IMG/VR virus record: IMGVR_UViG_3300041411_000129
Span: 62,001 to 126,000 of that record
DNA: 64,000 nucleotides
Direction: 5' to 3' (one strand)
Below are positions 44,269 through 50,907 of this stretch, one piece after another. Each line of letters starts with the position of its first letter. The first letter of the stretch is position 1. A program made the translations under genes and the position numbers. The notes beneath the pieces are model-generated. The model saw only the letters and a list, made by a program, of their open reading frames with translations, was not told the origin of the DNA and ran no database searches.

Positions 44269-44634
44269 ATGGGTGAATTGATTATTTGGTGGATTACTGG
44301 CGAGCAAGTAAAAGAGATCTTTGCTCGTTACGCTAAACATGAGAAAGGTGAGTTTGACCGAGTAACTTTACCCGATGGTCTTCCGAATTACCTGAAGGAG
44401 GAGCTCGGTTCTCGTAATGGCCGGCCTGGACGTTGCCGTCTGTGGATCAATCATAAGTTTGAATTCCAGGGCTGTAACTGGGATCAGGCTAAAGCTGACG
44501 AGTTGTTCGAGGGTATTGATCAGGCAGACATTGGCGGTATCGTCATGTGGCGTCACGATATCCAGCGTCTGTTGGATTTCGATTTCCCTAATCTCTTCAC
44601 AGACAAAGATCTGAATAAGATCGAAGAAATCTAA
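44269..44634 (+). CDS. hypothetical protein
   Basis: TAAGGA RBS. Confidence 0.75.
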   Translation: MGELIIWWITGEQVKEIFARYAKHEKGEFDRVTLPDGLPNYLKEELGSRNGRPGRCRLWINHKFEFQGCNWDQAKADELFEGIDQADIGGIVMWRHDIQRLLDFDFPNLFTDKDLNKIEEI

Positions 44635-44676
44635 ACTATACGGCGTTTATGCCGTAACCGATAAGAGTTAAGTCCC

Positions 44677-46155
44677 ATGACTATCCGCGAAGAAGTTATC
44701 GCTTTGAAACCAACAACAACCGAACGTGAAGTTCCTACCCGTATCTTCGGCGAAGCTGAAGTGCGTCAGACGTACATCGACAAGGCTAAGTACGAGAGTG
44801 CTGGTCGAGGTTCTTTCAATCCGTTATTGTCGCTGATTGGACCTAATGCTGACTTCGATGGTAATGCCTTGAATATAAAACCGGGGCAACTAGAGCAAGT
44901 GCTCTTTACACGAGGTTACGCTACAGATATAAATTCCGACATCTCTCTCACTCCAGATGCGTTCGCTGATTATCAGCGGTTTATGGCTGAGTCACAAACA
45001 GCGATGGTTCTCGAGACAGGTGACGCGACTAAAGCCCTGATCATGGAGAACAAACCGCTGGACGAGAGCGAATACTTCAACCGTAAAATGTTGGCTAAGG
45101 CTGAAGCGGTTGAGCAACGTATCTTGAAGTTGATGGAAGAAGGGATGACTCGTGTTGAGGCTACTCAAGTAGTTGCTTATAACGCAGATCAGCTCAACAA
45201 AATGCGCCAGAAAGAATGGCGCGCACACGTCAACGGTTATGAACTCTTTGGTCCTGATGATCCTAATCGCCGGCCTATTAAGGACCCGACATCTTACGAT
45301 GACGATCTGATCGCTCGTCAATACCGTGATCCACTCTTTAAGGTCCGAGCTATTGAGGATCACATCGAGAGCATCATGATGTTCAAAGATCCTGGTTGGG
45401 AAGCTCGGATTATCCGTCTGCGTAAAGAACAAGCGATGTTGATGGCGCCGGTTGCAGAACCTGTAGTCGCTGAACCGGAAGAGCCACCACCTCCACCGCC
45501 TATTCTGGACTTCACCACCGGTGATCTGGAAATGCCTGAGCGATTCATCATCAAGGATCTCAAAGGCTTCGAGTTCAATCCAGATACCAAGTTCGATGGT
45601 CTGCGCCTGCCTTACGATTCCTGCCTGTTTGTATTGGGTGATGAACTGAAGGCTGTTGTTCTGGCTACTCAAGAAGATGAGGACGTAATCACTCTGAAGC
45701 TTCTATCTGAGACCAAGAAGGATATCCCTTGGCACGCCACTGCAACGCTGTACGCGCGTCTTCAAGGCGATAAGGTTAAGGTTCGTTGGGGTAACACTAA
45801 ACGCAGCCTGGATAAGCGTTTGGGTATGGTGTCTTCTGTTCTTGCCTTCATCGCTGGTGAGCAGCTTAGTGAAGTTGAGATTGAAACCGTTATCACCGCC
45901 CCTGAGCAAGATGTTCCTCCACCTAAGCCTGGCAACTGCTACAATGTGGTTAGTCTGGTGCAAGGTCGTCGCGGTAAACGCACTGACTGGAAAGGTGGCA
46001 CTCACGCCTCTCCTCGCGAACACAAACGTAAAGGTCACTGGTGGCCTGGCAAACACGGTCCTATCTGGATCAAGGCTACTATCGTGAACAAAGGCGTTCT
46101 CGGTAAAGTCGATAAAGAATATCACGTCACTAAACTTGAAGGAACAAACGCATGA
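44677..46155 (+). CDS. multidomain early protein with an RNAP active-site-like peptide (PNADFDGN) and a C-terminal SPRxHxRxGHW domain
   Basis: 492 aa; motif at 44845-44865; poly-Pro linker; basic His-rich C-terminus. Confidence 0.8.
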   Translation: MTIREEVIALKPTTTEREVPTRIFGEAEVRQTYIDKAKYESAGRGSFNPLLSLIGPNADFDGNALNIKPGQLEQVLFTRGYATDINSDISLTPDAFADYQRFMAESQTAMVLETGDATKALIMENKPLDESEYFNRKMLAKAEAVEQRILKLMEEGMTRVEATQVVAYNADQLNKMRQKEWRAHVNGYELFGPDDPNRRPIKDPTSYDDDLIARQYRDPLFKVRAIEDHIESIMMFKDPGWEARIIRLRKEQAMLMAPVAEPVVAEPEEPPPPPPILDFTTGDLEMPERFIIKDLKGFEFNPDTKFDGLRLPYDSCLFVLGDELKAVVLATQEDEDVITLKLLSETKKDIPWHATATLYARLQGDKVKVRWGNTKRSLDKRLGMVSSVLAFIAGEQLSEVEIETVITAPEQDVPPPKPGNCYNVVSLVQGRRGKRTDWKGGTHASPREHKRKGHWWPGKHGPIWIKATIVNKGVLGKVDKEYHVTKLEGTNA

Positions 46156-46781
46156 AACTGATTACCCGCCGTGCATTCAAACTGTTGGAAGGTGAAGTAC
46201 TGTTCTCGAAATACTCTCCGATGGTCTTCGAAGGATTTGAGATCAAACTCGAAAACTGCGGCAACAACGATTGGGTTACCGATCCGATCCGACCTGACAA
46301 CATCATGAACGAAGGCTCGGAGGACATGTACCTGAAGTTGGATGTAGCGGAGCAGCTGAAGGATGATCCTAATGCCCCACATCTGGAGATGGATTTCGAC
46401 TACTCTGGCCGTGACGGTCTTTACGAAGATGACGATTCTCTGATCGCTATCTACGACGAGGCCGATATCCTCAAGTTGGCGGAGCGTCTTGTACGTCTGC
46501 TGCCAAACCACGAGCTGGTGCTTAAAGCCCCCGAGGTTGAGCCAAAGACGGTGGATCTCGACGATGGGCTAACGAAAGAAACTGCTCCAGATCCTGAACG
46601 CTGTAACGATGACGTTTACAAACACGGCGTTAGCCTTGGTTTCCACGACATGACCAAAGACGAGGCGGAAGCCTGGTGTATCGAACAAACCAAGGTAACC
46701 GGTCGTAAGCACGACTGGCACTACGTTGGTGGTCGTGTTCACATCAAGGCTATGCCAGAAGTTAAGGGAGGGGAACAGTAA
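46152..46781 (+). CDS. hypothetical protein
   Basis: ATGA coupling to the previous gene. Confidence 0.8.
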   Translation: MKLITRRAFKLLEGEVLFSKYSPMVFEGFEIKLENCGNNDWVTDPIRPDNIMNEGSEDMYLKLDVAEQLKDDPNAPHLEMDFDYSGRDGLYEDDDSLIAIYDEADILKLAERLVRLLPNHELVLKAPEVEPKTVDLDDGLTKETAPDPERCNDDVYKHGVSLGFHDMTKDEAEAWCIEQTKVTGRKHDWHYVGGRVHIKAMPEVKGGEQ

Positions 46782-47296
46782 TGGGTGCGGATTGGCATGG
46801 TGCTTCCGTAAAACTGAAACCTCGGACGATGCTTAGCGATACTCCGAATACTTTCCTTACGGGGATGTTCGGGCGGGATGTATCTATCACTGACATCGAA
46901 ATCGCCATGGTTCCTAAAGAGGTGGATCTAGGCCGAAACTATCGGCTGTTCTCTTGGTTAGCTGGCGTCTGCGGCGAAACACCACCTCTCCATGAGAATC
47001 TCGAAGAACGGGGTGAAAAGGTTCTGGAGTTACTCGACTGGTTGGGGATCGATAACGACTACAATAAGACTGGTGATTTCTGGATCGGCGATTCCAACTG
47101 GAACTACGTCAGCGTAAAGGAGTTGGTTGAGTTCAATTACGATGCTGAGTCTGTGCCGGGTGGTGATACTTACCGTGAGTTATTCATGGTGCGTGGTGTT
47201 CCTGAAGAGCAGCGTGACGAGTTCTTCAAGTTCATCCAGTGGTGTTCTGAAACCGGGCAGGATTGGATTGTGTTCGGCTTCTACGACGCGTTCTAA
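46781..47296 (+). CDS. hypothetical protein (RNYxLFxxLAGV-type phage motif)
   Basis: TAATG coupling; RNYRLFSWLAGV. Confidence 0.75.
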   Translation: MGADWHGASVKLKPRTMLSDTPNTFLTGMFGRDVSITDIEIAMVPKEVDLGRNYRLFSWLAGVCGETPPLHENLEERGEKVLELLDWLGIDNDYNKTGDFWIGDSNWNYVSVKELVEFNYDAESVPGGDTYRELFMVRGVPEEQRDEFFKFIQWCSETGQDWIVFGFYDAF

Positions 47297-47298
47297 GA

Positions 47299-47337
47299 GT
47301 AGCCTCCCTTCGGGGAGGTTGCTTCATTCTTTTTTTT
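47299..47337 (+). terminator. intrinsic terminator
   Basis: GTAGCCTCCC-TTCG-GGGAGGTTGC plus a T run. Confidence 0.85.
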
Positions 47338-47683
47338 GTAAGAAATAACTTCGACACTTCTCTTATGCATCACACTTCACTCAGCTTGGGAAAGAGGAGG
47401 AAGGGTGGTGTTTACGAAGTAAACACCGGGTTGGTGGTGAATGGGATAGACTAGACTCCGTAGCGAAATGAGTGAAACGATATTGAGTAGGAGTATCTTT
47501 ATAGCGAGGAACTCGCTAAGAGGAATTAAAAATTAACGAAATGTCCTAATGATATTTATAGGGCGTGTAAACAGGATAGGCCTATTGCCTATCCGAGTGA
47601 AAATCCTTTTATGCTCTTTACTTAAAAAAAGCCCTAATGAAATGTAAGCAACTGCTCTTAATTGTTTTTCGAGGATTTCACCG
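47338..47683. other. non-coding hairpin cluster, candidate replication origin or ssDNA signal
   Basis: Three GAA-triloop hairpins, one further 8-bp hairpin and an AT-rich tract; no credible ORF. Confidence 0.5.
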
Positions 47684-48190
47684 ATGACTGAAGCTGAAGA
47701 GAAAGAAAAAGCCAAGAAGCTGGTAGAGGAAACTCAACCGGGCATGCACCTGCGATCTATGCCTGACGCTCGCGAGTCCGGTGAAGTCATGATCGAACTC
47801 CCAACCACCATGCCGTTTGACGATGGCGTGAATGGGATTATCGAAAGTCTTGAAGCCAAGGGTTTTAAGGTTAGCTGGCGCCGCGAAGGCGACGCTTCTT
47901 TTGAAGACGCGTCTGAAGGTATCGACACAGGTCGTCCTGTGGCGGGTACTGCATCTGGGGATAACAACATCATCAATGGCGTAAGCTTACCGAAGGTAGA
48001 CGACCACTCCGTCTACAAGGTGGTAAAGCTGGTGCGTCCTGAAGATACCGTCAAGGATGGCGAGAGCGGATTGCTCTACCTGATGAATGGTAATGGTGAT
48101 GTAAAGGAATACCTTCAGAATGAAGGATTCCTCGTGGTGGATGAAGAAGAGCAGTTGCACACTGCGATTCTGGAGAATGGTGAAGCTTGA
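47684..48190 (+). CDS. acidic hypothetical protein
   Basis: GAGGA RBS; contains SLE and SFE, possible protease sites. Confidence 0.75.
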   Translation: MTEAEEKEKAKKLVEETQPGMHLRSMPDARESGEVMIELPTTMPFDDGVNGIIESLEAKGFKVSWRREGDASFEDASEGIDTGRPVAGTASGDNNIINGVSLPKVDDHSVYKVVKLVRPEDTVKDGESGLLYLMNGNGDVKEYLQNEGFLVVDEEEQLHTAILENGEA

Positions 48191-48238
48191 TCATGCGGCA
48201 TAAAGACGGGGTGGGATTACCCACCCTATCCTAAACCT

Positions 48239-48255
48239 CTACGGTCATACATTAC
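48239..48255 (+). promoter_or_regulatory. putative early promoter of the homing endonuclease
   Basis: CTACGGTCATACATTAC. Confidence 0.55.
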
Positions 48256-48286
48256 CACTTCGATATACATTCGCTGAGGTAATGTC

Positions 48287-48883
48287 ATGGGATCTAAATC
48301 AACTCCTGGGTTCTATGTGATTAAGCATAAACCATCAGGTCATTACTACGGCGGTTCTACCCATTCTGTAATTCAGAGGATCGGCCGCCATAAATCGTTC
48401 CTAACTCGTAGAGAACATCCTAACGAGAAACTGCAAAGTATTTTTACCTCATGGGAAGATATCACTATCACCGTGACGGCTACCGATGATCTTGAAGAAG
48501 CTCAAAGATTGGAGCAAGAGTTCATAAACGAACATTTGAATAAAGAACTGTGCTGCAATGTCGGTACTGGCTCCTCTAGCGTTTGGGCTAAAGGTAAAAT
48601 GCCAGAACACATGAAGGATAAAATCCGTAAGGCTAACACCGGTCGGATATTGTCTGATGAGCATAAAAGAAAAATAGTTGAATCGTTCAAAAATAGTACA
48701 GGGTATGTCAACGCTAGGATCGCAGCTAGAGAGGCATGCGGAAAGAAAGTAAGCATACGCGGTGTAGTTTACCCTAGCGTCAAGGACGCCTCCGTTAAAT
48801 TAGGACACACCCGGCCGACTATCACTAGAAGAATAAATTCCGGCAACCCAAAATACAGTAATTGGTTCTGGGTTGCCGGGTAA
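48287..48883 (+). mobile_element. free-standing GIY-YIG homing endonuclease with NUMOD3 and NUMOD1-like DNA-binding modules
   Basis: GFYVI...YYGGS...R..H...E..FI...N; HMKDKIRKANTGRILSDEHKRKI; YPSVKDASVKLG HTH; more AT-rich than its neighbours. Confidence 0.85.
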
Positions 48884-48902: not shown

Positions 48903-49742
48903 TCAGTATCGAGGTCTTGCACCGAGAGACAGCTTAAGGATTTTACGCTTAAGCTCTTGGTCTGCAAGCATCCCGACTTTCTTCCAATCCACGTTGAGGT
49001 AATCCATGTACATCTGGTCAGCATCTGCGTAGCTGTCGATAATCTCCCGGATACGTCCGAGACTTGCGCCAGCTCGAATCTGACCTTCATCCAGATCAAT
49101 GATCAGGTTGTTGTAGATGTACGCCTTGACTGCACGGAAGACGAGTTCCGCAAACTCTGAGTAGTACATCGGGTCGAGGTTGTTAAAGTTCGCCTCGTGG
49201 GACACACGACACCGTACTGCACCGTCACCGACCAACTGGTTGATGTCGTTGACTAGGATGGTGTTAATTCCTACGAGTTGAACGTATGCTGTACCCATTA
49301 CGGTACTGCCGCTAACGGCCCGCATGATGTCACGACCAACCATGAGCATATCGCCAGCACGACGATCGAAACCTGAGTTAGTACTGCTACTCAGGCCTTG
49401 AGTCAAACCGTAGATAAGTTCATGGACAGTTGTGATGTTCCGACCACCCAATGCTTCACGGGGGAATCGGTACACTACGTTGTAAGCATCGATGAAATCA
49501 ACTTCCGCAAAACACAACGGAAGGAACATTTCAGTACCAGAGTTCAGGTTGACATCGATTGCGACACGAGCCTCAATAACGAGTTCGCGGATACGCTGAT
49601 CAATAGACAGCCCATTGACGTTATCGAAATAACGCTCTTGGCGTGTTGGGTCGTAACGCTTTGGCATGAATGCTTGCTTCAAGATATCCGGTGGAATACC
49701 GTTCTTGACACGCATGATCGCCACTGTAACCGGATCTGACAT
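48903..49742 (-). CDS. conserved chimallivirus hypothetical/structural protein
   Basis: GGAGG RBS; IPPDILKQAF and AVKAYIYNNL; divergent from phuZ. Confidence 0.7.
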   Translation of the reverse strand: MSDPVTVAIMRVKNGIPPDILKQAFMPKRYDPTRQERYFDNVNGLSIDQRIRELVIEARVAIDVNLNSGTEMFLPLCFAEVDFIDAYNVVYRFPREALGGRNITTVHELIYGLTQGLSSSTNSGFDRRAGDMLMVGRDIMRAVSGSTVMGTAYVQLVGINTILVNDINQLVGDGAVRCRVSHEANFNNLDPMYYSEFAELVFRAVKAYIYNNLIIDLDEGQIRAGASLGRIREIIDSYADADQMYMDYLNVDWKKVGMLADQELKRKILKLSLGARPRY

Positions 49743-49825
49743 AACGAATCCCTCCAATAGGACTCAAGTGATTTCGCTTGAAGCCTCTTACCATTGTTGC
49801 ACCAACCATCCATTAGGAGCTGTAC

Positions 49826-50833
49826 ATGTCTGAAGTAATCAACACTGGCCTGATCAACGTTCGTCCTCGCACTATCCGTTTCTACGCCTGTGGTGGTACT
49901 GCAATCAACCAACTGCGAGCATACCGCGATAACCATCCTGGTGAACCGCGTCTGCATGGCGACGAGAAATACAGCTACATCGATACCAGCTTCGCCAACC
50001 TCGATGGCGCGCTGATGTCCGAAACCTTCACCCTGAAAGAAGCCGATGGTTCGGGTTCCGACCGGAAGAAGAACGCCGCGCGTATCGTGGGGGTACTTCC
50101 TGAAATCATGTTGGCTCACCAGCCTGCTGACTTCAACGTCGTTATCTTCTCCCTGTCTGGCGGCACTGGCTCCGTGGCCGGCCCGATCATCCTGAAAGAA
50201 CTGCTGGCCAAAGGTCACAAAGCTGTCGGCGTTACTTCCGCAGCATTCACCTCCGGCAAGAAATCCTCCAACGCCATCGATACCCTGACTGGCCTGGAGT
50301 TGGCTGTTGCGTCCGTCGGCCGTCCGGTTGTTCTGAGCTACACCCCGAACGATCCGAACAAAACCGATTCCGACAACAACATCAAACCACTGTTCGTTCT
50401 GCAAACCCTGGCCAAACTGGCGAGCGGCAAGAACGGCCATCTGGATTCGTCCGACGTGGCGAACCTGTTCGACTTCCACACCGTAACCAACTACAAGCCA
50501 TCGCTGGCTCTGCTGGATGTGTACGCTGGTGAAGAACAGTTGAAGTCTGACGTTACCAGCGCCATCGGCATTGCCGGTCTGCTGAAAGATCGCACCAGCG
50601 TCATGCCGGCTATCAATGCCGCTTATGACACTGTCGGCTACCTGCCTGAAGACAATCGTGAATTCGCCAACTCCTTCTACTTCGTCGTGTCCATCGAGAA
50701 GCTGAACGGCGTTGTCAAAGACATGAACGATCGTAAAGCTCAGGCTGAACTGAAAGAACGCGTCACCAACACCGTTTCGACCCTTGCTACCGCAGGCGTT
50801 ATGGTAGATGAAGCAACCGGCCTGGTCTTGTAA
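49826..50833 (+). CDS. phuZ: phage tubulin PhuZ
   Basis: ACGGTAIN, IDTS, GSGSDR and the tubulin signature SLSGGTGS; HLDSSD T7 loop. Confidence 0.95.
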   Translation: MSEVINTGLINVRPRTIRFYACGGTAINQLRAYRDNHPGEPRLHGDEKYSYIDTSFANLDGALMSETFTLKEADGSGSDRKKNAARIVGVLPEIMLAHQPADFNVVIFSLSGGTGSVAGPIILKELLAKGHKAVGVTSAAFTSGKKSSNAIDTLTGLELAVASVGRPVVLSYTPNDPNKTDSDNNIKPLFVLQTLAKLASGKNGHLDSSDVANLFDFHTVTNYKPSLALLDVYAGEEQLKSDVTSAIGIAGLLKDRTSVMPAINAAYDTVGYLPEDNREFANSFYFVVSIEKLNGVVKDMNDRKAQAELKERVTNTVSTLATAGVMVDEATGLVL

Positions 50834-50847
50834 GACCTGAGCCGTTA

Positions 50848-50884
50848 ATAAACTGCGGGGCCAAGTGCCCCGCAGTTTATGCCC
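50848..50884 (+). terminator. hairpin terminator
   Basis: ATAAACTGCGGGGC-CAAGT-GCCCCGCAGTTTAT-GCC. Confidence 0.8.
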
Positions 50885-50907
50885 TATTCGTAAAGAGGTT
50901 CACCATC

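What the first reader, a model, noticed from the sequence alone, without database searches (positions are those of the whole stretch)
47338..47683. Non-coding cluster of DNA-type GAA-triloop and tandem G.A hairpins: candidate origin or ssDNA recognition element
Seen: 346 bp without a credible ORF. It holds GGTGTTTAC-GAA-GTAAACACC (47407-47427), TAGCGAG-GAA-CTCGCTA (47502-47518) and GGATAGGC-CTATT-GCCTATCC (47574-47594). A purine-rich element (47455-47494) folds as ACTCC..GC-GA-AAT-GA-GT-GAA-AC-GA-(T)ATT-GA-GT..GGAGT only if tandem sheared G.A pairs are allowed. An AT-rich tract and two CCTAATGA copies follow. Established: GNA triloops and tandem G.A pairs are exceptionally stable in single-stranded DNA, whereas most terminators here use RNA-type loops such as TTCG and GCAA. 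Inference: strand-specific selection on ssDNA structure, pointing to a replication origin, priming site, packaging signal or hairpin promoter.
Basis: partly seen in the sequence, partly recalled or inferred. Interest (0 to 1): 0.72.

Follow-up and report, generated by a model that had tools for sequence, protein, structure and literature searches.

The report
Conserved structured RNA of jumbo phages
The hairpin cluster is real: it is the core of a previously undescribed, conserved structured element of about 230 nt, most likely a non-coding RNA, present once per genome in a small clade of nucleus-forming jumbo phages; its function is still unknown.

Summary
The window comes from a 254-kb PhuZ-encoding (chimallivirus-type) jumbo phage assembled from a rhizosphere metagenome.

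Three of them (47406-47428, 47455-47494, 47502-47518) are strongly supported by compensatory changes in 14 distinct relatives: 94% of cells paired, 21 of 30 pairs with double changes, 0 of 500 shuffles as good. 40 of 42 loops are GNA. The proposed tandem G.A positions are mostly invariant or near-invariant, and in one lineage one pair of them is replaced by Watson-Crick pairs. Conserved G.U wobbles put the selection on the + strand.

The element sits after the upstream gene's terminator. It begins about 40 nt downstream of an invariant phiKZ-type TATG promoter motif. About 200 nt later comes a hairpin followed by a second TATG, the terminator-promoter module used across this genome.

It occurs once per genome, matches no Rfam family, and has one cultured homologue, Pseudomonas phage pPa_SNUABM_DT01.

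There is no GC-skew or gene-strand switch at the site, and nothing requires single-stranded DNA.

Best reading: a new structured RNA, either a discrete ncRNA or a promoter-proximal leader. The origin or ssDNA reading is not excluded, but nothing supports it. No transcript data exist.

The parts
47297..47337 (+). Intrinsic terminator of the upstream gene 46781-47296: a 12-bp stem with a TTCG loop, then a T-run. It insulates the element from upstream transcription.
   Evidence: (terminator scan). A terminator with a T-run lies about 40 nt before the TATG in the relatives aligned, although the upstream genes differ.
47364..47367 (+). TATG motif #1, the putative phiKZ-type (non-virion RNA polymerase) promoter, with +1 at G47367.
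   Evidence: Invariant at a fixed offset, 35-42 nt before GGGTGG, in all 14 relatives and in phage DT01. phiKZ late promoters are TATG with +1 at the G (PMC4666361). TATG and TTTATGC are enriched upstream of genes in this genome (53 vs 22.8 expected; 14 vs 1.4). The PWM score of this site is only moderate (85th percentile of coding TATGs). Function as a promoter is inferred.
47388..47405 (+). Uninterrupted 18-nt polypurine tract (GGGAAAGAGGAGGAAGGG), followed by the invariant T-GG that opens hairpin 1.
   Evidence: It is 18-20 nt of pure A/G in nearly all relatives, with A/G transitions. The proposed pairing with the upstream pyrimidine-rich stretch is not supported.
47406..47428 (+). Hairpin H1: 10 pairs including a conserved U.G at the base, with a GNA triloop (GAA).
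   Evidence: helix 1: 98.6% of cells paired, 6 of 10 pairs with changes on both sides, U.G in 13 of 14. The loop is GAA, GTA or GGA in 14 of 14.
47429..47454 (+). Conserved G-rich joiner (GGGTTGGTGGTGAATGGGATAGACTAG).
   Evidence: Invariant or near-invariant letters. No supported pairing was found.
47455..47494 (+). Hairpin H2: outer stem ACTCC/GGAGT, an internal loop, two tandem G.A steps separated by 3-4 pairs, a 2-bp tip and a GNA triloop.
   Evidence: helices 2-4 (13 pairs, 9 with changes on both sides). Most of the G.A positions are invariant or at least 80% conserved; the lower step becomes G-C/A-U in L006. It is the minimum-energy fold on the + strand as RNA only.
47495..47501 (+). Joiner with a conserved TCT.
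47502..47518 (+). Hairpin H3: a 7-bp stem with a GAA triloop.
   Evidence: helix 5: 94.9% paired, 6 of 7 pairs with changes on both sides. The loop is GNA in 12 of 14.
47519..47573 (+). A/T-rich linker with two conserved boxes: (G)TAAAAAnTTAC-like at 47526-47537, and AATGATA at 47548-47554, 11 nt further on.
   Evidence: A 4-5-bp hairpin reading of the first box is not supported. It resembles the phiKZ middle-promoter box AAanTTACc (PMC4666361), but it does not match this genome's own TAAA-N12-ACATTAC class.
47574..47594 (+). Hairpin with an 8-bp stem, the putative terminator and 3' end of the RNA.
   Evidence: A strong 8-10-bp hairpin of unrelated sequence lies at the same place in all 11 types, 197-217 nt after TATG #1 in 10 of them. 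A hairpin followed by a TATG promoter motif (typically cttTATGcc) is the common intergenic module in this genome. There is no U-run in the window; DT01 has a canonical hairpin plus U-run.
47610..47613 (+). TATG motif #2 (CTTTTATGC), the putative promoter of ORF 47684-48190, with a 71-nt 5' UTR.
   Evidence: 96th percentile of coding TATGs. Present in all 11 metagenomic types examined, absent in DT01.
47684..48190 (+). Downstream gene: a 168-aa acidic protein (pI 4.4) of unknown function. Every homologue found has the element upstream.
   Evidence: No Pfam, PHROG or phage-collection match. The AlphaFold2 model is poor.

Best explanation
The region encodes a previously undescribed structured RNA of about 230 nt.

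Transcription is inferred to start at the G of a phiKZ-type TATG promoter (47364-47367), after the upstream gene's own terminator. It would be carried out by the phage's own multisubunit RNA polymerase. The RNA would end at the hairpin 47574-47594, which together with a second TATG (47610) forms the terminator-promoter module this phage uses between genes.

The RNA has an 18-20-nt single-stranded polypurine tract, then three hairpins capped by GNA triloops, the middle one carrying two tandem G.A steps. The hairpins are joined by conserved purine-rich linkers and followed by an A/U-rich tail.

Shown: the three helices, their strand specificity, the single-copy conserved position, and the conserved flanking signals.

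Inferred: that it is transcribed, that it is a discrete product, and how it acts. My committed guess is that the invariant loops, G.A steps and linkers are protein-recognition surfaces, so the RNA works as a small RNP or decoy rather than by long antisense pairing. The polypurine tract would be a single-stranded platform.
For: - Covariation.
- Strand specificity: conserved wobbles, and hairpin 2 folds only on the + strand as RNA.
- TATG is invariant in all 14 relatives plus DT01 at a fixed offset, and TATG is the phiKZ late promoter with +1 at the G.
- TATG-type motifs are enriched upstream of genes, usually just after a hairpin.
- A positionally conserved hairpin lies 197-217 nt downstream.
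- The next gene has its own TATG.
- The RNA core stays 57-97% identical, while identity of the neighbouring protein falls as low as 34-36% in the lineages where both were measured.
- In DT01 the RNA is kept, but no homologue of that protein is detectable.
- One copy per genome.
- Short RNAs that stop at a terminator just downstream of their start site, ahead of a gene, are documented in phiKZ and 201phi2-1 (PMC11512511).
Against: - No transcript evidence. The only RNA-library runs hold low, even depth of a relative about 90% identical, and one run is probably DNA.
- The context score of TATG #1 is only moderate.
- The window's 3' hairpin lacks a U-run.
- G.T wobbles, GNA loops and G.A steps would also be compatible with a folded + strand of DNA.
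- The neighbouring protein is acidic and unlikely to be the RNA's partner, so no partner is known.
Confidence: 0.5

Rival explanations
1. A cis-acting leader rather than a free RNA. The structured RNA is made from TATG #1 and acts on its own transcription complex or transcript to decide whether transcription passes the hairpin at 47574-47594 into the downstream gene or genes. It could work like the put RNAs of phage HK022, which make the polymerase resistant to terminators, or as a protein- or ligand-sensing attenuator.
For: - The order promoter, structured RNA, hairpin, gene is kept on the same strand in every member, while upstream neighbours vary.
- No insertion ever separates the RNA from the next gene, although homing-endonuclease genes have inserted just beyond that gene.
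- In DT01 a canonical terminator is followed within 35 nt by the next ORF with no TATG between them.
- Highly conserved junctions resemble aptamer or protein-binding cores.
Against: - No antiterminator covaries with the terminator arms: each RNA's own arm pairs no better with its upstream sequence than foreign arms do (-9.8 vs -10.1 kcal/mol). This argues against a classical riboswitch or attenuator, but not against a put-like mechanism.
- In the metagenomic clade the downstream gene has its own well-matching TATG.
- In DT01 the downstream gene is not detectably homologous.
Confidence: 0.25
2. A DNA-level element: a replication origin or priming site. In its most coherent form, transcription from TATG #1 leaves a persistent RNA:DNA hybrid at the polypurine tract. 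The displaced + strand folds into the GNA/G.A hairpins, and the A/T-rich stretch 47519-47573 unwinds.
For:
- An 18-20-nt pure purine tract ending in a G-run follows the promoter motif in nearly every member. Purine-rich RNA makes the most stable hybrids (own knowledge).
- An A/T-rich tract follows.
- One copy per genome.
- No origin is known to me for these phages.
Against: - No GC-skew extremum or gene-orientation switch at the site.
- The DNA-parameter fold does not recover the covariation-supported hairpin 2.
- The conserved wobbles (13 of 14 and 11 of 14) are typical of RNA.
- The element is confined to a small clade and absent from ten other cultured chimalliviruses searched.
- No replication gene is adjacent.
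Confidence: 0.1
3. A packaging signal, or a hairpin promoter of the N4 type.
For: Only the resemblance of 5-9-bp stems with 3-nt purine loops to N4 promoter hairpins (my own knowledge).
Against: - The phage carries fragments of a multisubunit RNA polymerase, not shown to use hairpin promoters.
- Its own promoter-like motifs are linear: TATG and TAAA-N12-ACATTAC.
- GNA hairpins are not used elsewhere in the genome.
- The element is far from the contig ends, and no terminase gene is nearby.
Confidence: 0.03

Closest known systems
5'-UTR-derived and intergenic small RNAs of phiKZ and 201phi2-1, for example the sRNA upstream of phiKZ gp182 / 201phi2-1 gp277 (PMC11512511)
   Same: Same virus group. 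Both are short structured transcripts that begin at a phage promoter and stop at a terminator just upstream of a gene, conserved by position across genera, with unknown function.
   Different: No sequence or model match: phiKZ, PhiPA3 and 201phi2-1 give no hit. The neighbouring gene is different. Here the structure is backed by extensive covariation but not by any transcript data.
put RNAs of phage HK022 (RNA-mediated processive antitermination; my own knowledge)
   Same: Promoter-proximal, multi-hairpin RNA with conserved internal loops, lying upstream of a terminator and always in cis to the genes it precedes.
   Different: No homology tested or expected. put acts on the host polymerase. This element has three hairpins plus a polypurine tract, and a second promoter follows the terminator.
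Riboswitch or attenuator leaders
   Same: Conserved junction and loop nucleotides, followed by a hairpin upstream of a gene.
   Different: No Rfam match and no covarying alternative pairing with the terminator.
Transcription-primed origins: ColE1 RNA II, T4 oriF/oriG, mitochondrial CSBII (my own knowledge)
   Same: A promoter followed by a purine/G-rich tract and an A/T-rich stretch, with a structured transcript.
   Different: No skew or orientation signature. Nothing shows an R-loop or initiation here.
Extra-stable DNA mini-hairpins d(GCGAAGC), single-strand initiation signals, N4 promoter hairpins
   Same: C-GNA-G triloops and pyrimidine-GA-purine tandem mismatches on one strand.
   Different: The context is a sense-strand transcription unit. 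RNA parameters reproduce the conserved fold better than DNA parameters.

Membership tests
Any Rfam 15 family | Covariance-model match at or near the gathering score | tested here: not met
   No gathering-level match in the window. Nothing overlapping the element's structured core (47388-47594) at E<=10 in 47200-48300; the only overlapping hit is a chance-level one (E 7.8, minus strand) reaching 47365. No match at E<=1 in four relatives, including DT01.
phiKZ-type late (non-virion RNA polymerase) promoter | TATG motif whose G is the transcription start | tested here: met
   TATG at 47364-47367 is invariant at a fixed offset in 14 relatives plus DT01. The family definition comes from PMC4666361.
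phiKZ-type late (non-virion RNA polymerase) promoter | Initiation by the phage polymerase at that G | not testable with these tools
   No usable RNA data. In phiKZ, TATG is necessary but not sufficient.
Intrinsic terminator (hairpin 47574-47594) | G+C-rich stem followed by a U-run | tested here: inconclusive
   The stem is present and positionally conserved. The window has no U-run (one search does not list it). It does match the genome's own hairpin-plus-TATG modules. DT01 has a hairpin plus a T-run.
Riboswitch / transcription attenuator | Mutually exclusive antiterminator pairing that covaries with the terminator | tested here: not met
   Own-arm and foreign-arm duplex energies do not differ.
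Riboswitch / transcription attenuator | Ligand binding | not testable with these tools
   No assay is available, and the downstream gene gives no clue.
Replication origin | GC-skew extremum or switch of gene orientation at the site | tested here: not met
   cumulative skew is noisy with extremes at 15 kb and 200 kb. The genes flanking 109.3 kb on both sides are on the + strand.
Replication origin | Initiation, copy-number peak, or R-loop | not testable with these tools
   Needs data from infected cells.
ssDNA-specific structure | The fold is better explained by DNA than by RNA energetics | tested here: inconclusive
   The + strand z-scores are alike (RNA -4.62, DNA -4.66), but only the RNA fold reproduces the covariation-supported hairpin 2. 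The DNA parameter set may lack G.A bonuses.
N4-type hairpin promoter | Presence of an N4-like single-subunit virion RNA polymerase | not tested
   Only a fragment similar to the multisubunit beta subunit was seen nearby. The genome was not searched for an N4-like enzyme.
CsrB/RsmZ-type protein sponge | Repeated GGA motifs presented in hairpin loops | tested here: not met
   The loops are GAA or GUA in most members. GGA occurs in a loop in only one lineage for H1 and one for H3. There is no Rfam hit on the element.
Kink-turn | Three-nucleotide bulge directly followed by G.A/A.G, with the partner strand continuing into a Watson-Crick stem | tested here: not met
   By inspection of hairpin 2: a C-G pair separates the asymmetric loop from the G.A step, and the upper step has only a one-base bulge.

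The most novel reading that the evidence does not exclude
The element is the transcription-primed replication origin of this group of nucleus-forming phages. The TATG promoter fires, the 18-20-nt polypurine tract forms a persistent RNA:DNA hybrid that serves as primer, the displaced + strand is held open by the GNA/G.A hairpins, and the A/T-rich stretch unwinds. To my knowledge it would be the first origin defined for a chimallivirus.
Probability: 0.07. Interest if true: 0.85.

Novelty: new variant of a known kind. Interest (0 to 1): 0.55.

Why it matters
Nucleus-forming jumbo phages transcribe with their own unusual polymerases inside a protein shell. The searches run here turned up only one conserved sRNA candidate for this phage group, supported by a four-phage alignment and single-sequence fold predictions, with no covariation analysis.

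This element is a well-supported new RNA family in that group. It is better conserved than the protein gene next to it. It also has a cultured representative, Pseudomonas phage pPa_SNUABM_DT01, so it can be tested directly.

If it acts on the phage polymerase or primes replication, it would open a question that is currently hard to approach. If it is a small regulatory RNA, it is a useful but ordinary addition.

Tried and rejected
- **5' hairpin and GTAA-N4-TTAC mini-hairpin.** Pairing of the pyrimidine-rich 5' stretch with the polypurine tract, and a small hairpin at the GTAA-N4-TTAC box, are no better than shuffles or slid controls. Single-sequence folds of the 5' stretch are weak, z -0.1 to -3.0.
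- **Long-range pairing of the TATG region** with the joiner after H1, suggested by one alignment, disappeared when sequences were anchored on TATG.
- **Covarying antiterminator:** none found.
- **Small ORFs and a mini-ORF after the Shine-Dalgarno-like AGGAGG:** not conserved.
- **Early-promoter class TAAA-N12-ACATTAC:** absent from the element.
- **Repeats or paralogues:** one copy per genome.
- **RNA evidence:** two RNA-library runs hold only short, low-depth contigs of a relative, spread evenly over genes and element.
- **Neighbouring protein as a clue:** no family, a poor structure model (pLDDT 45), and acidic, so I did not run a protein-RNA complex prediction.
- **Homologue of that protein in DT01:** none by profile search.
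- **BLAST of the locus against cultured phages:** nothing. BLAST of the DT01 element finds only DT01 itself.
- **Weak model hit in Burkholderia phage FLC9** (E about 1): not convincing on inspection.

Full report
**What the window is.** The window is bases 62,001-126,000 of a 253,921-bp virus record with 51% G+C. A PhuZ tubulin gene lies at 49826-50833, a DUF7484 gene (homologue of phiKZ gp42) at 48903-49757 on the minus strand, and a fragment similar to the RNA-polymerase beta subunit at 44677-46155. This is an uncultivated chimallivirus-type jumbo phage. Runs holding its DNA are rhizosphere, root and soil metagenomes. Its closest cultured relative is only 34-41% identical in PhuZ and DUF7484.

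**The observation.** The gap 47297-47683 (387 bp) is among the ten longest in the genome. Its ORFs are short, overlap signals, and are not kept in relatives. The gap opens with a strong terminator for the upstream gene, 47297-47324 plus a T-run.

**Relatives.** I searched with the downstream protein and with a hairpin-1 pattern in IMG/VR and JGI metagenomes, and fetched contigs through protein look-ups. This gave 14 distinct versions of the region. In every one the element lies on the same strand immediately upstream of a homologue of ORF 47684-48190, while the gene upstream of it differs. The RNA core stays 57-97% identical to the window; identity of that protein falls as low as 34-36% in the lineages where both were measured. 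A covariance model finds exactly one copy per complete genome.

**Structure.** Three hairpins are supported by covariation:
- H1, 47406-47428
- H2, 47455-47494
- H3, 47502-47518

| Alignment | Cells paired | Pairs changed on both sides | Covariation score | Shuffles | Slid partners |
|---|---|---|---|---|---|
| 11 sequences, MAFFT, anchored on TATG | 96.6% | 19 of 27 | 0.593 | 0.209 (0 of 500 reach it) | at most 0.109 |
| 14 sequences, model-based | 94.2% | 21 of 30 | 0.573 | 0.199 | not quoted |

Loops are GNA in 14 of 14 (H1), 14 of 14 (H2) and 12 of 14 (H3) sequences. In locus L006 the lower step is replaced by G-C and A-U, which supports their juxtaposition.

A U.G at the base of H1 (13 of 14) and a G.U in H2 (11 of 14) would be A.C on the other strand. 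H2 folds only on the + strand. Selection therefore acts on the + strand.

**RNA or DNA.** Covariation alone cannot separate an RNA from a folded + strand of DNA. The context favours RNA.
- A TATG is invariant 35-42 nt before the core in all 14 relatives and in DT01. In phiKZ, TATG is the late-promoter element, with the G as start site (PMC4666361).
- In this genome TATG, and especially CTTTATGC, is enriched upstream of genes (TTTATGC 14 vs 1.4 expected). It typically sits directly after a G+C-rich hairpin, forming a terminator-promoter module.
- Exactly such a module follows the element: the hairpin 47574-47594, then CTTTTATGC at 47606-47614. All 11 metagenomic types examined have a strong hairpin of unrelated sequence there, 197-217 nt after the first TATG in ten of them, followed by a TATG.
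- With RNA parameters the minimum-energy fold of 47367-47600 reproduces H1, H2 and H3 as supported by covariation. With DNA parameters H2 is not recovered.
- Cumulative GC skew and gene orientation show nothing at this site.

The weak points are these. The only RNA-library runs carry low, even coverage of a related phage, and one is probably DNA. The sequence context of the first TATG scores only moderately.

**What kind of RNA.**
- A classical attenuator is unlikely. The terminator arms differ between lineages, yet they pair no better with their own upstream RNA than with foreign ones.
- A helix between the 5' pyrimidine-rich stretch and the 18-20-nt polypurine tract is not supported, so that tract is probably single-stranded.
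- The downstream gene has its own promoter motif.
- In the cultured phage pPa_SNUABM_DT01 the element is recognisable at MW735835.1:119,630-119,842 (31.9 bits, E 6e-7 per genome). DT01 keeps the TATG, the polypurine tract, an extended H1 with two G.A steps and a GAA loop, the joiner, and H3. H2 is replaced by a different insert.
- In DT01 no homologue of ORF 47684 is detectable nearby, and the element ends in a canonical terminator.
- The protein of ORF 47684 is acidic, pI 4.4, and an unlikely RNA binder.

Together this favours a self-contained RNA gene, with a cis-acting leader (possibly put-like) as the main rival. Because sequence is most conserved in loops, G.A steps and linkers rather than in long single strands, I infer recognition by protein. 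That step is inference only.

**Comparison with known systems.** There is no Rfam match for the window or for relatives. There are no hits in phiKZ, PhiPA3, 201phi2-1, Goslar, RAY, Eowyn, RP12, RTH11, LucasX or pEa_SNUABM_37. The nearest described things are the 5'-UTR-derived small RNAs mapped in phiKZ and 201phi2-1 (PMC11512511). They share the architecture but not the sequence. A full-text search found no report of a conserved structured RNA in Chimalliviridae matching this one.

**Verdict.** The best reading is a new family of structured phage RNA of unknown function, testable in DT01.

Noticed in passing
window 48229-48255, and about 15 other + strand intergenic sites genome-wide: A second promoter-like class, TAAA-N12-ACATTAC(c), is strongly enriched in intergenic regions (ACATTAC 12 vs 1.4 expected). 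One copy lies just upstream of the HNH endonuclease gene 48287-48883. It resembles the A/T-rich ...TATATTAC early promoters that I recall for phiKZ (not checked here).
   Followed up: partly
genome-wide, e.g. window 50853-50885 and 44623-44655: Recurrent terminator-promoter modules: a G+C-rich hairpin, often with a TTCG or GAAA loop, directly followed by CTTTATGCC.
   Followed up: partly
window 48287-48883; L053:2104-2745: Free-standing homing-endonuclease genes (HNH here and an HNH homologue in L020, GIY-YIG in L053) sit between ORF 47684 and the DUF7484 gene in some lineages and are absent in others, such as L004/L015, L005 and L006. This looks like a hot spot for endonuclease insertion next to PhuZ.
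   Followed up: no
window 47637-47687: A 16-codon upstream ORF (MKCKQLLLIVFRGFHR) whose TGA stop overlaps the ATG of ORF 47684 (ATGA). In L028 the same stretch is fused in frame to the main ORF, in L049 it is 11 codons, and it is absent in L005.
   Followed up: partly
window 47545-47554 and 47633-47650: AATGA-containing boxes are conserved both in the tail of the element (AATGATA) and in the 5' UTR of ORF 47684 (CCnAATGA(A)ATGTAAGC) across several lineages. They could be a shared protein-binding site.
   Followed up: no
window 46528-46584 (inside ORF 46152-46781): In the DNA run X1, a minority contig (depth 235 vs about 920) replaces 55 bases with 124 other letters, a population variant in this gene.
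   Followed up: no
genome ends (G000:C1:1-127 and the last 127 bases): The 'direct terminal repeat' is exactly 127 bp, a length that looks like an assembler overlap of a circular or permuted assembly rather than true phage ends.
   Followed up: no
L065:1400-1470 minus strand (Burkholderia phage FLC9, LC667451.1, about 14.0 kb): Downstream of a TTATG there is a purine-rich stretch containing GAGCGAAGC (a C-GAA-G loop motif) followed by a hairpin terminator, about 5 kb from PhuZ. The weak model hit (E about 1) lies just upstream, at L065:1501-1598; not convincing.
   Followed up: partly
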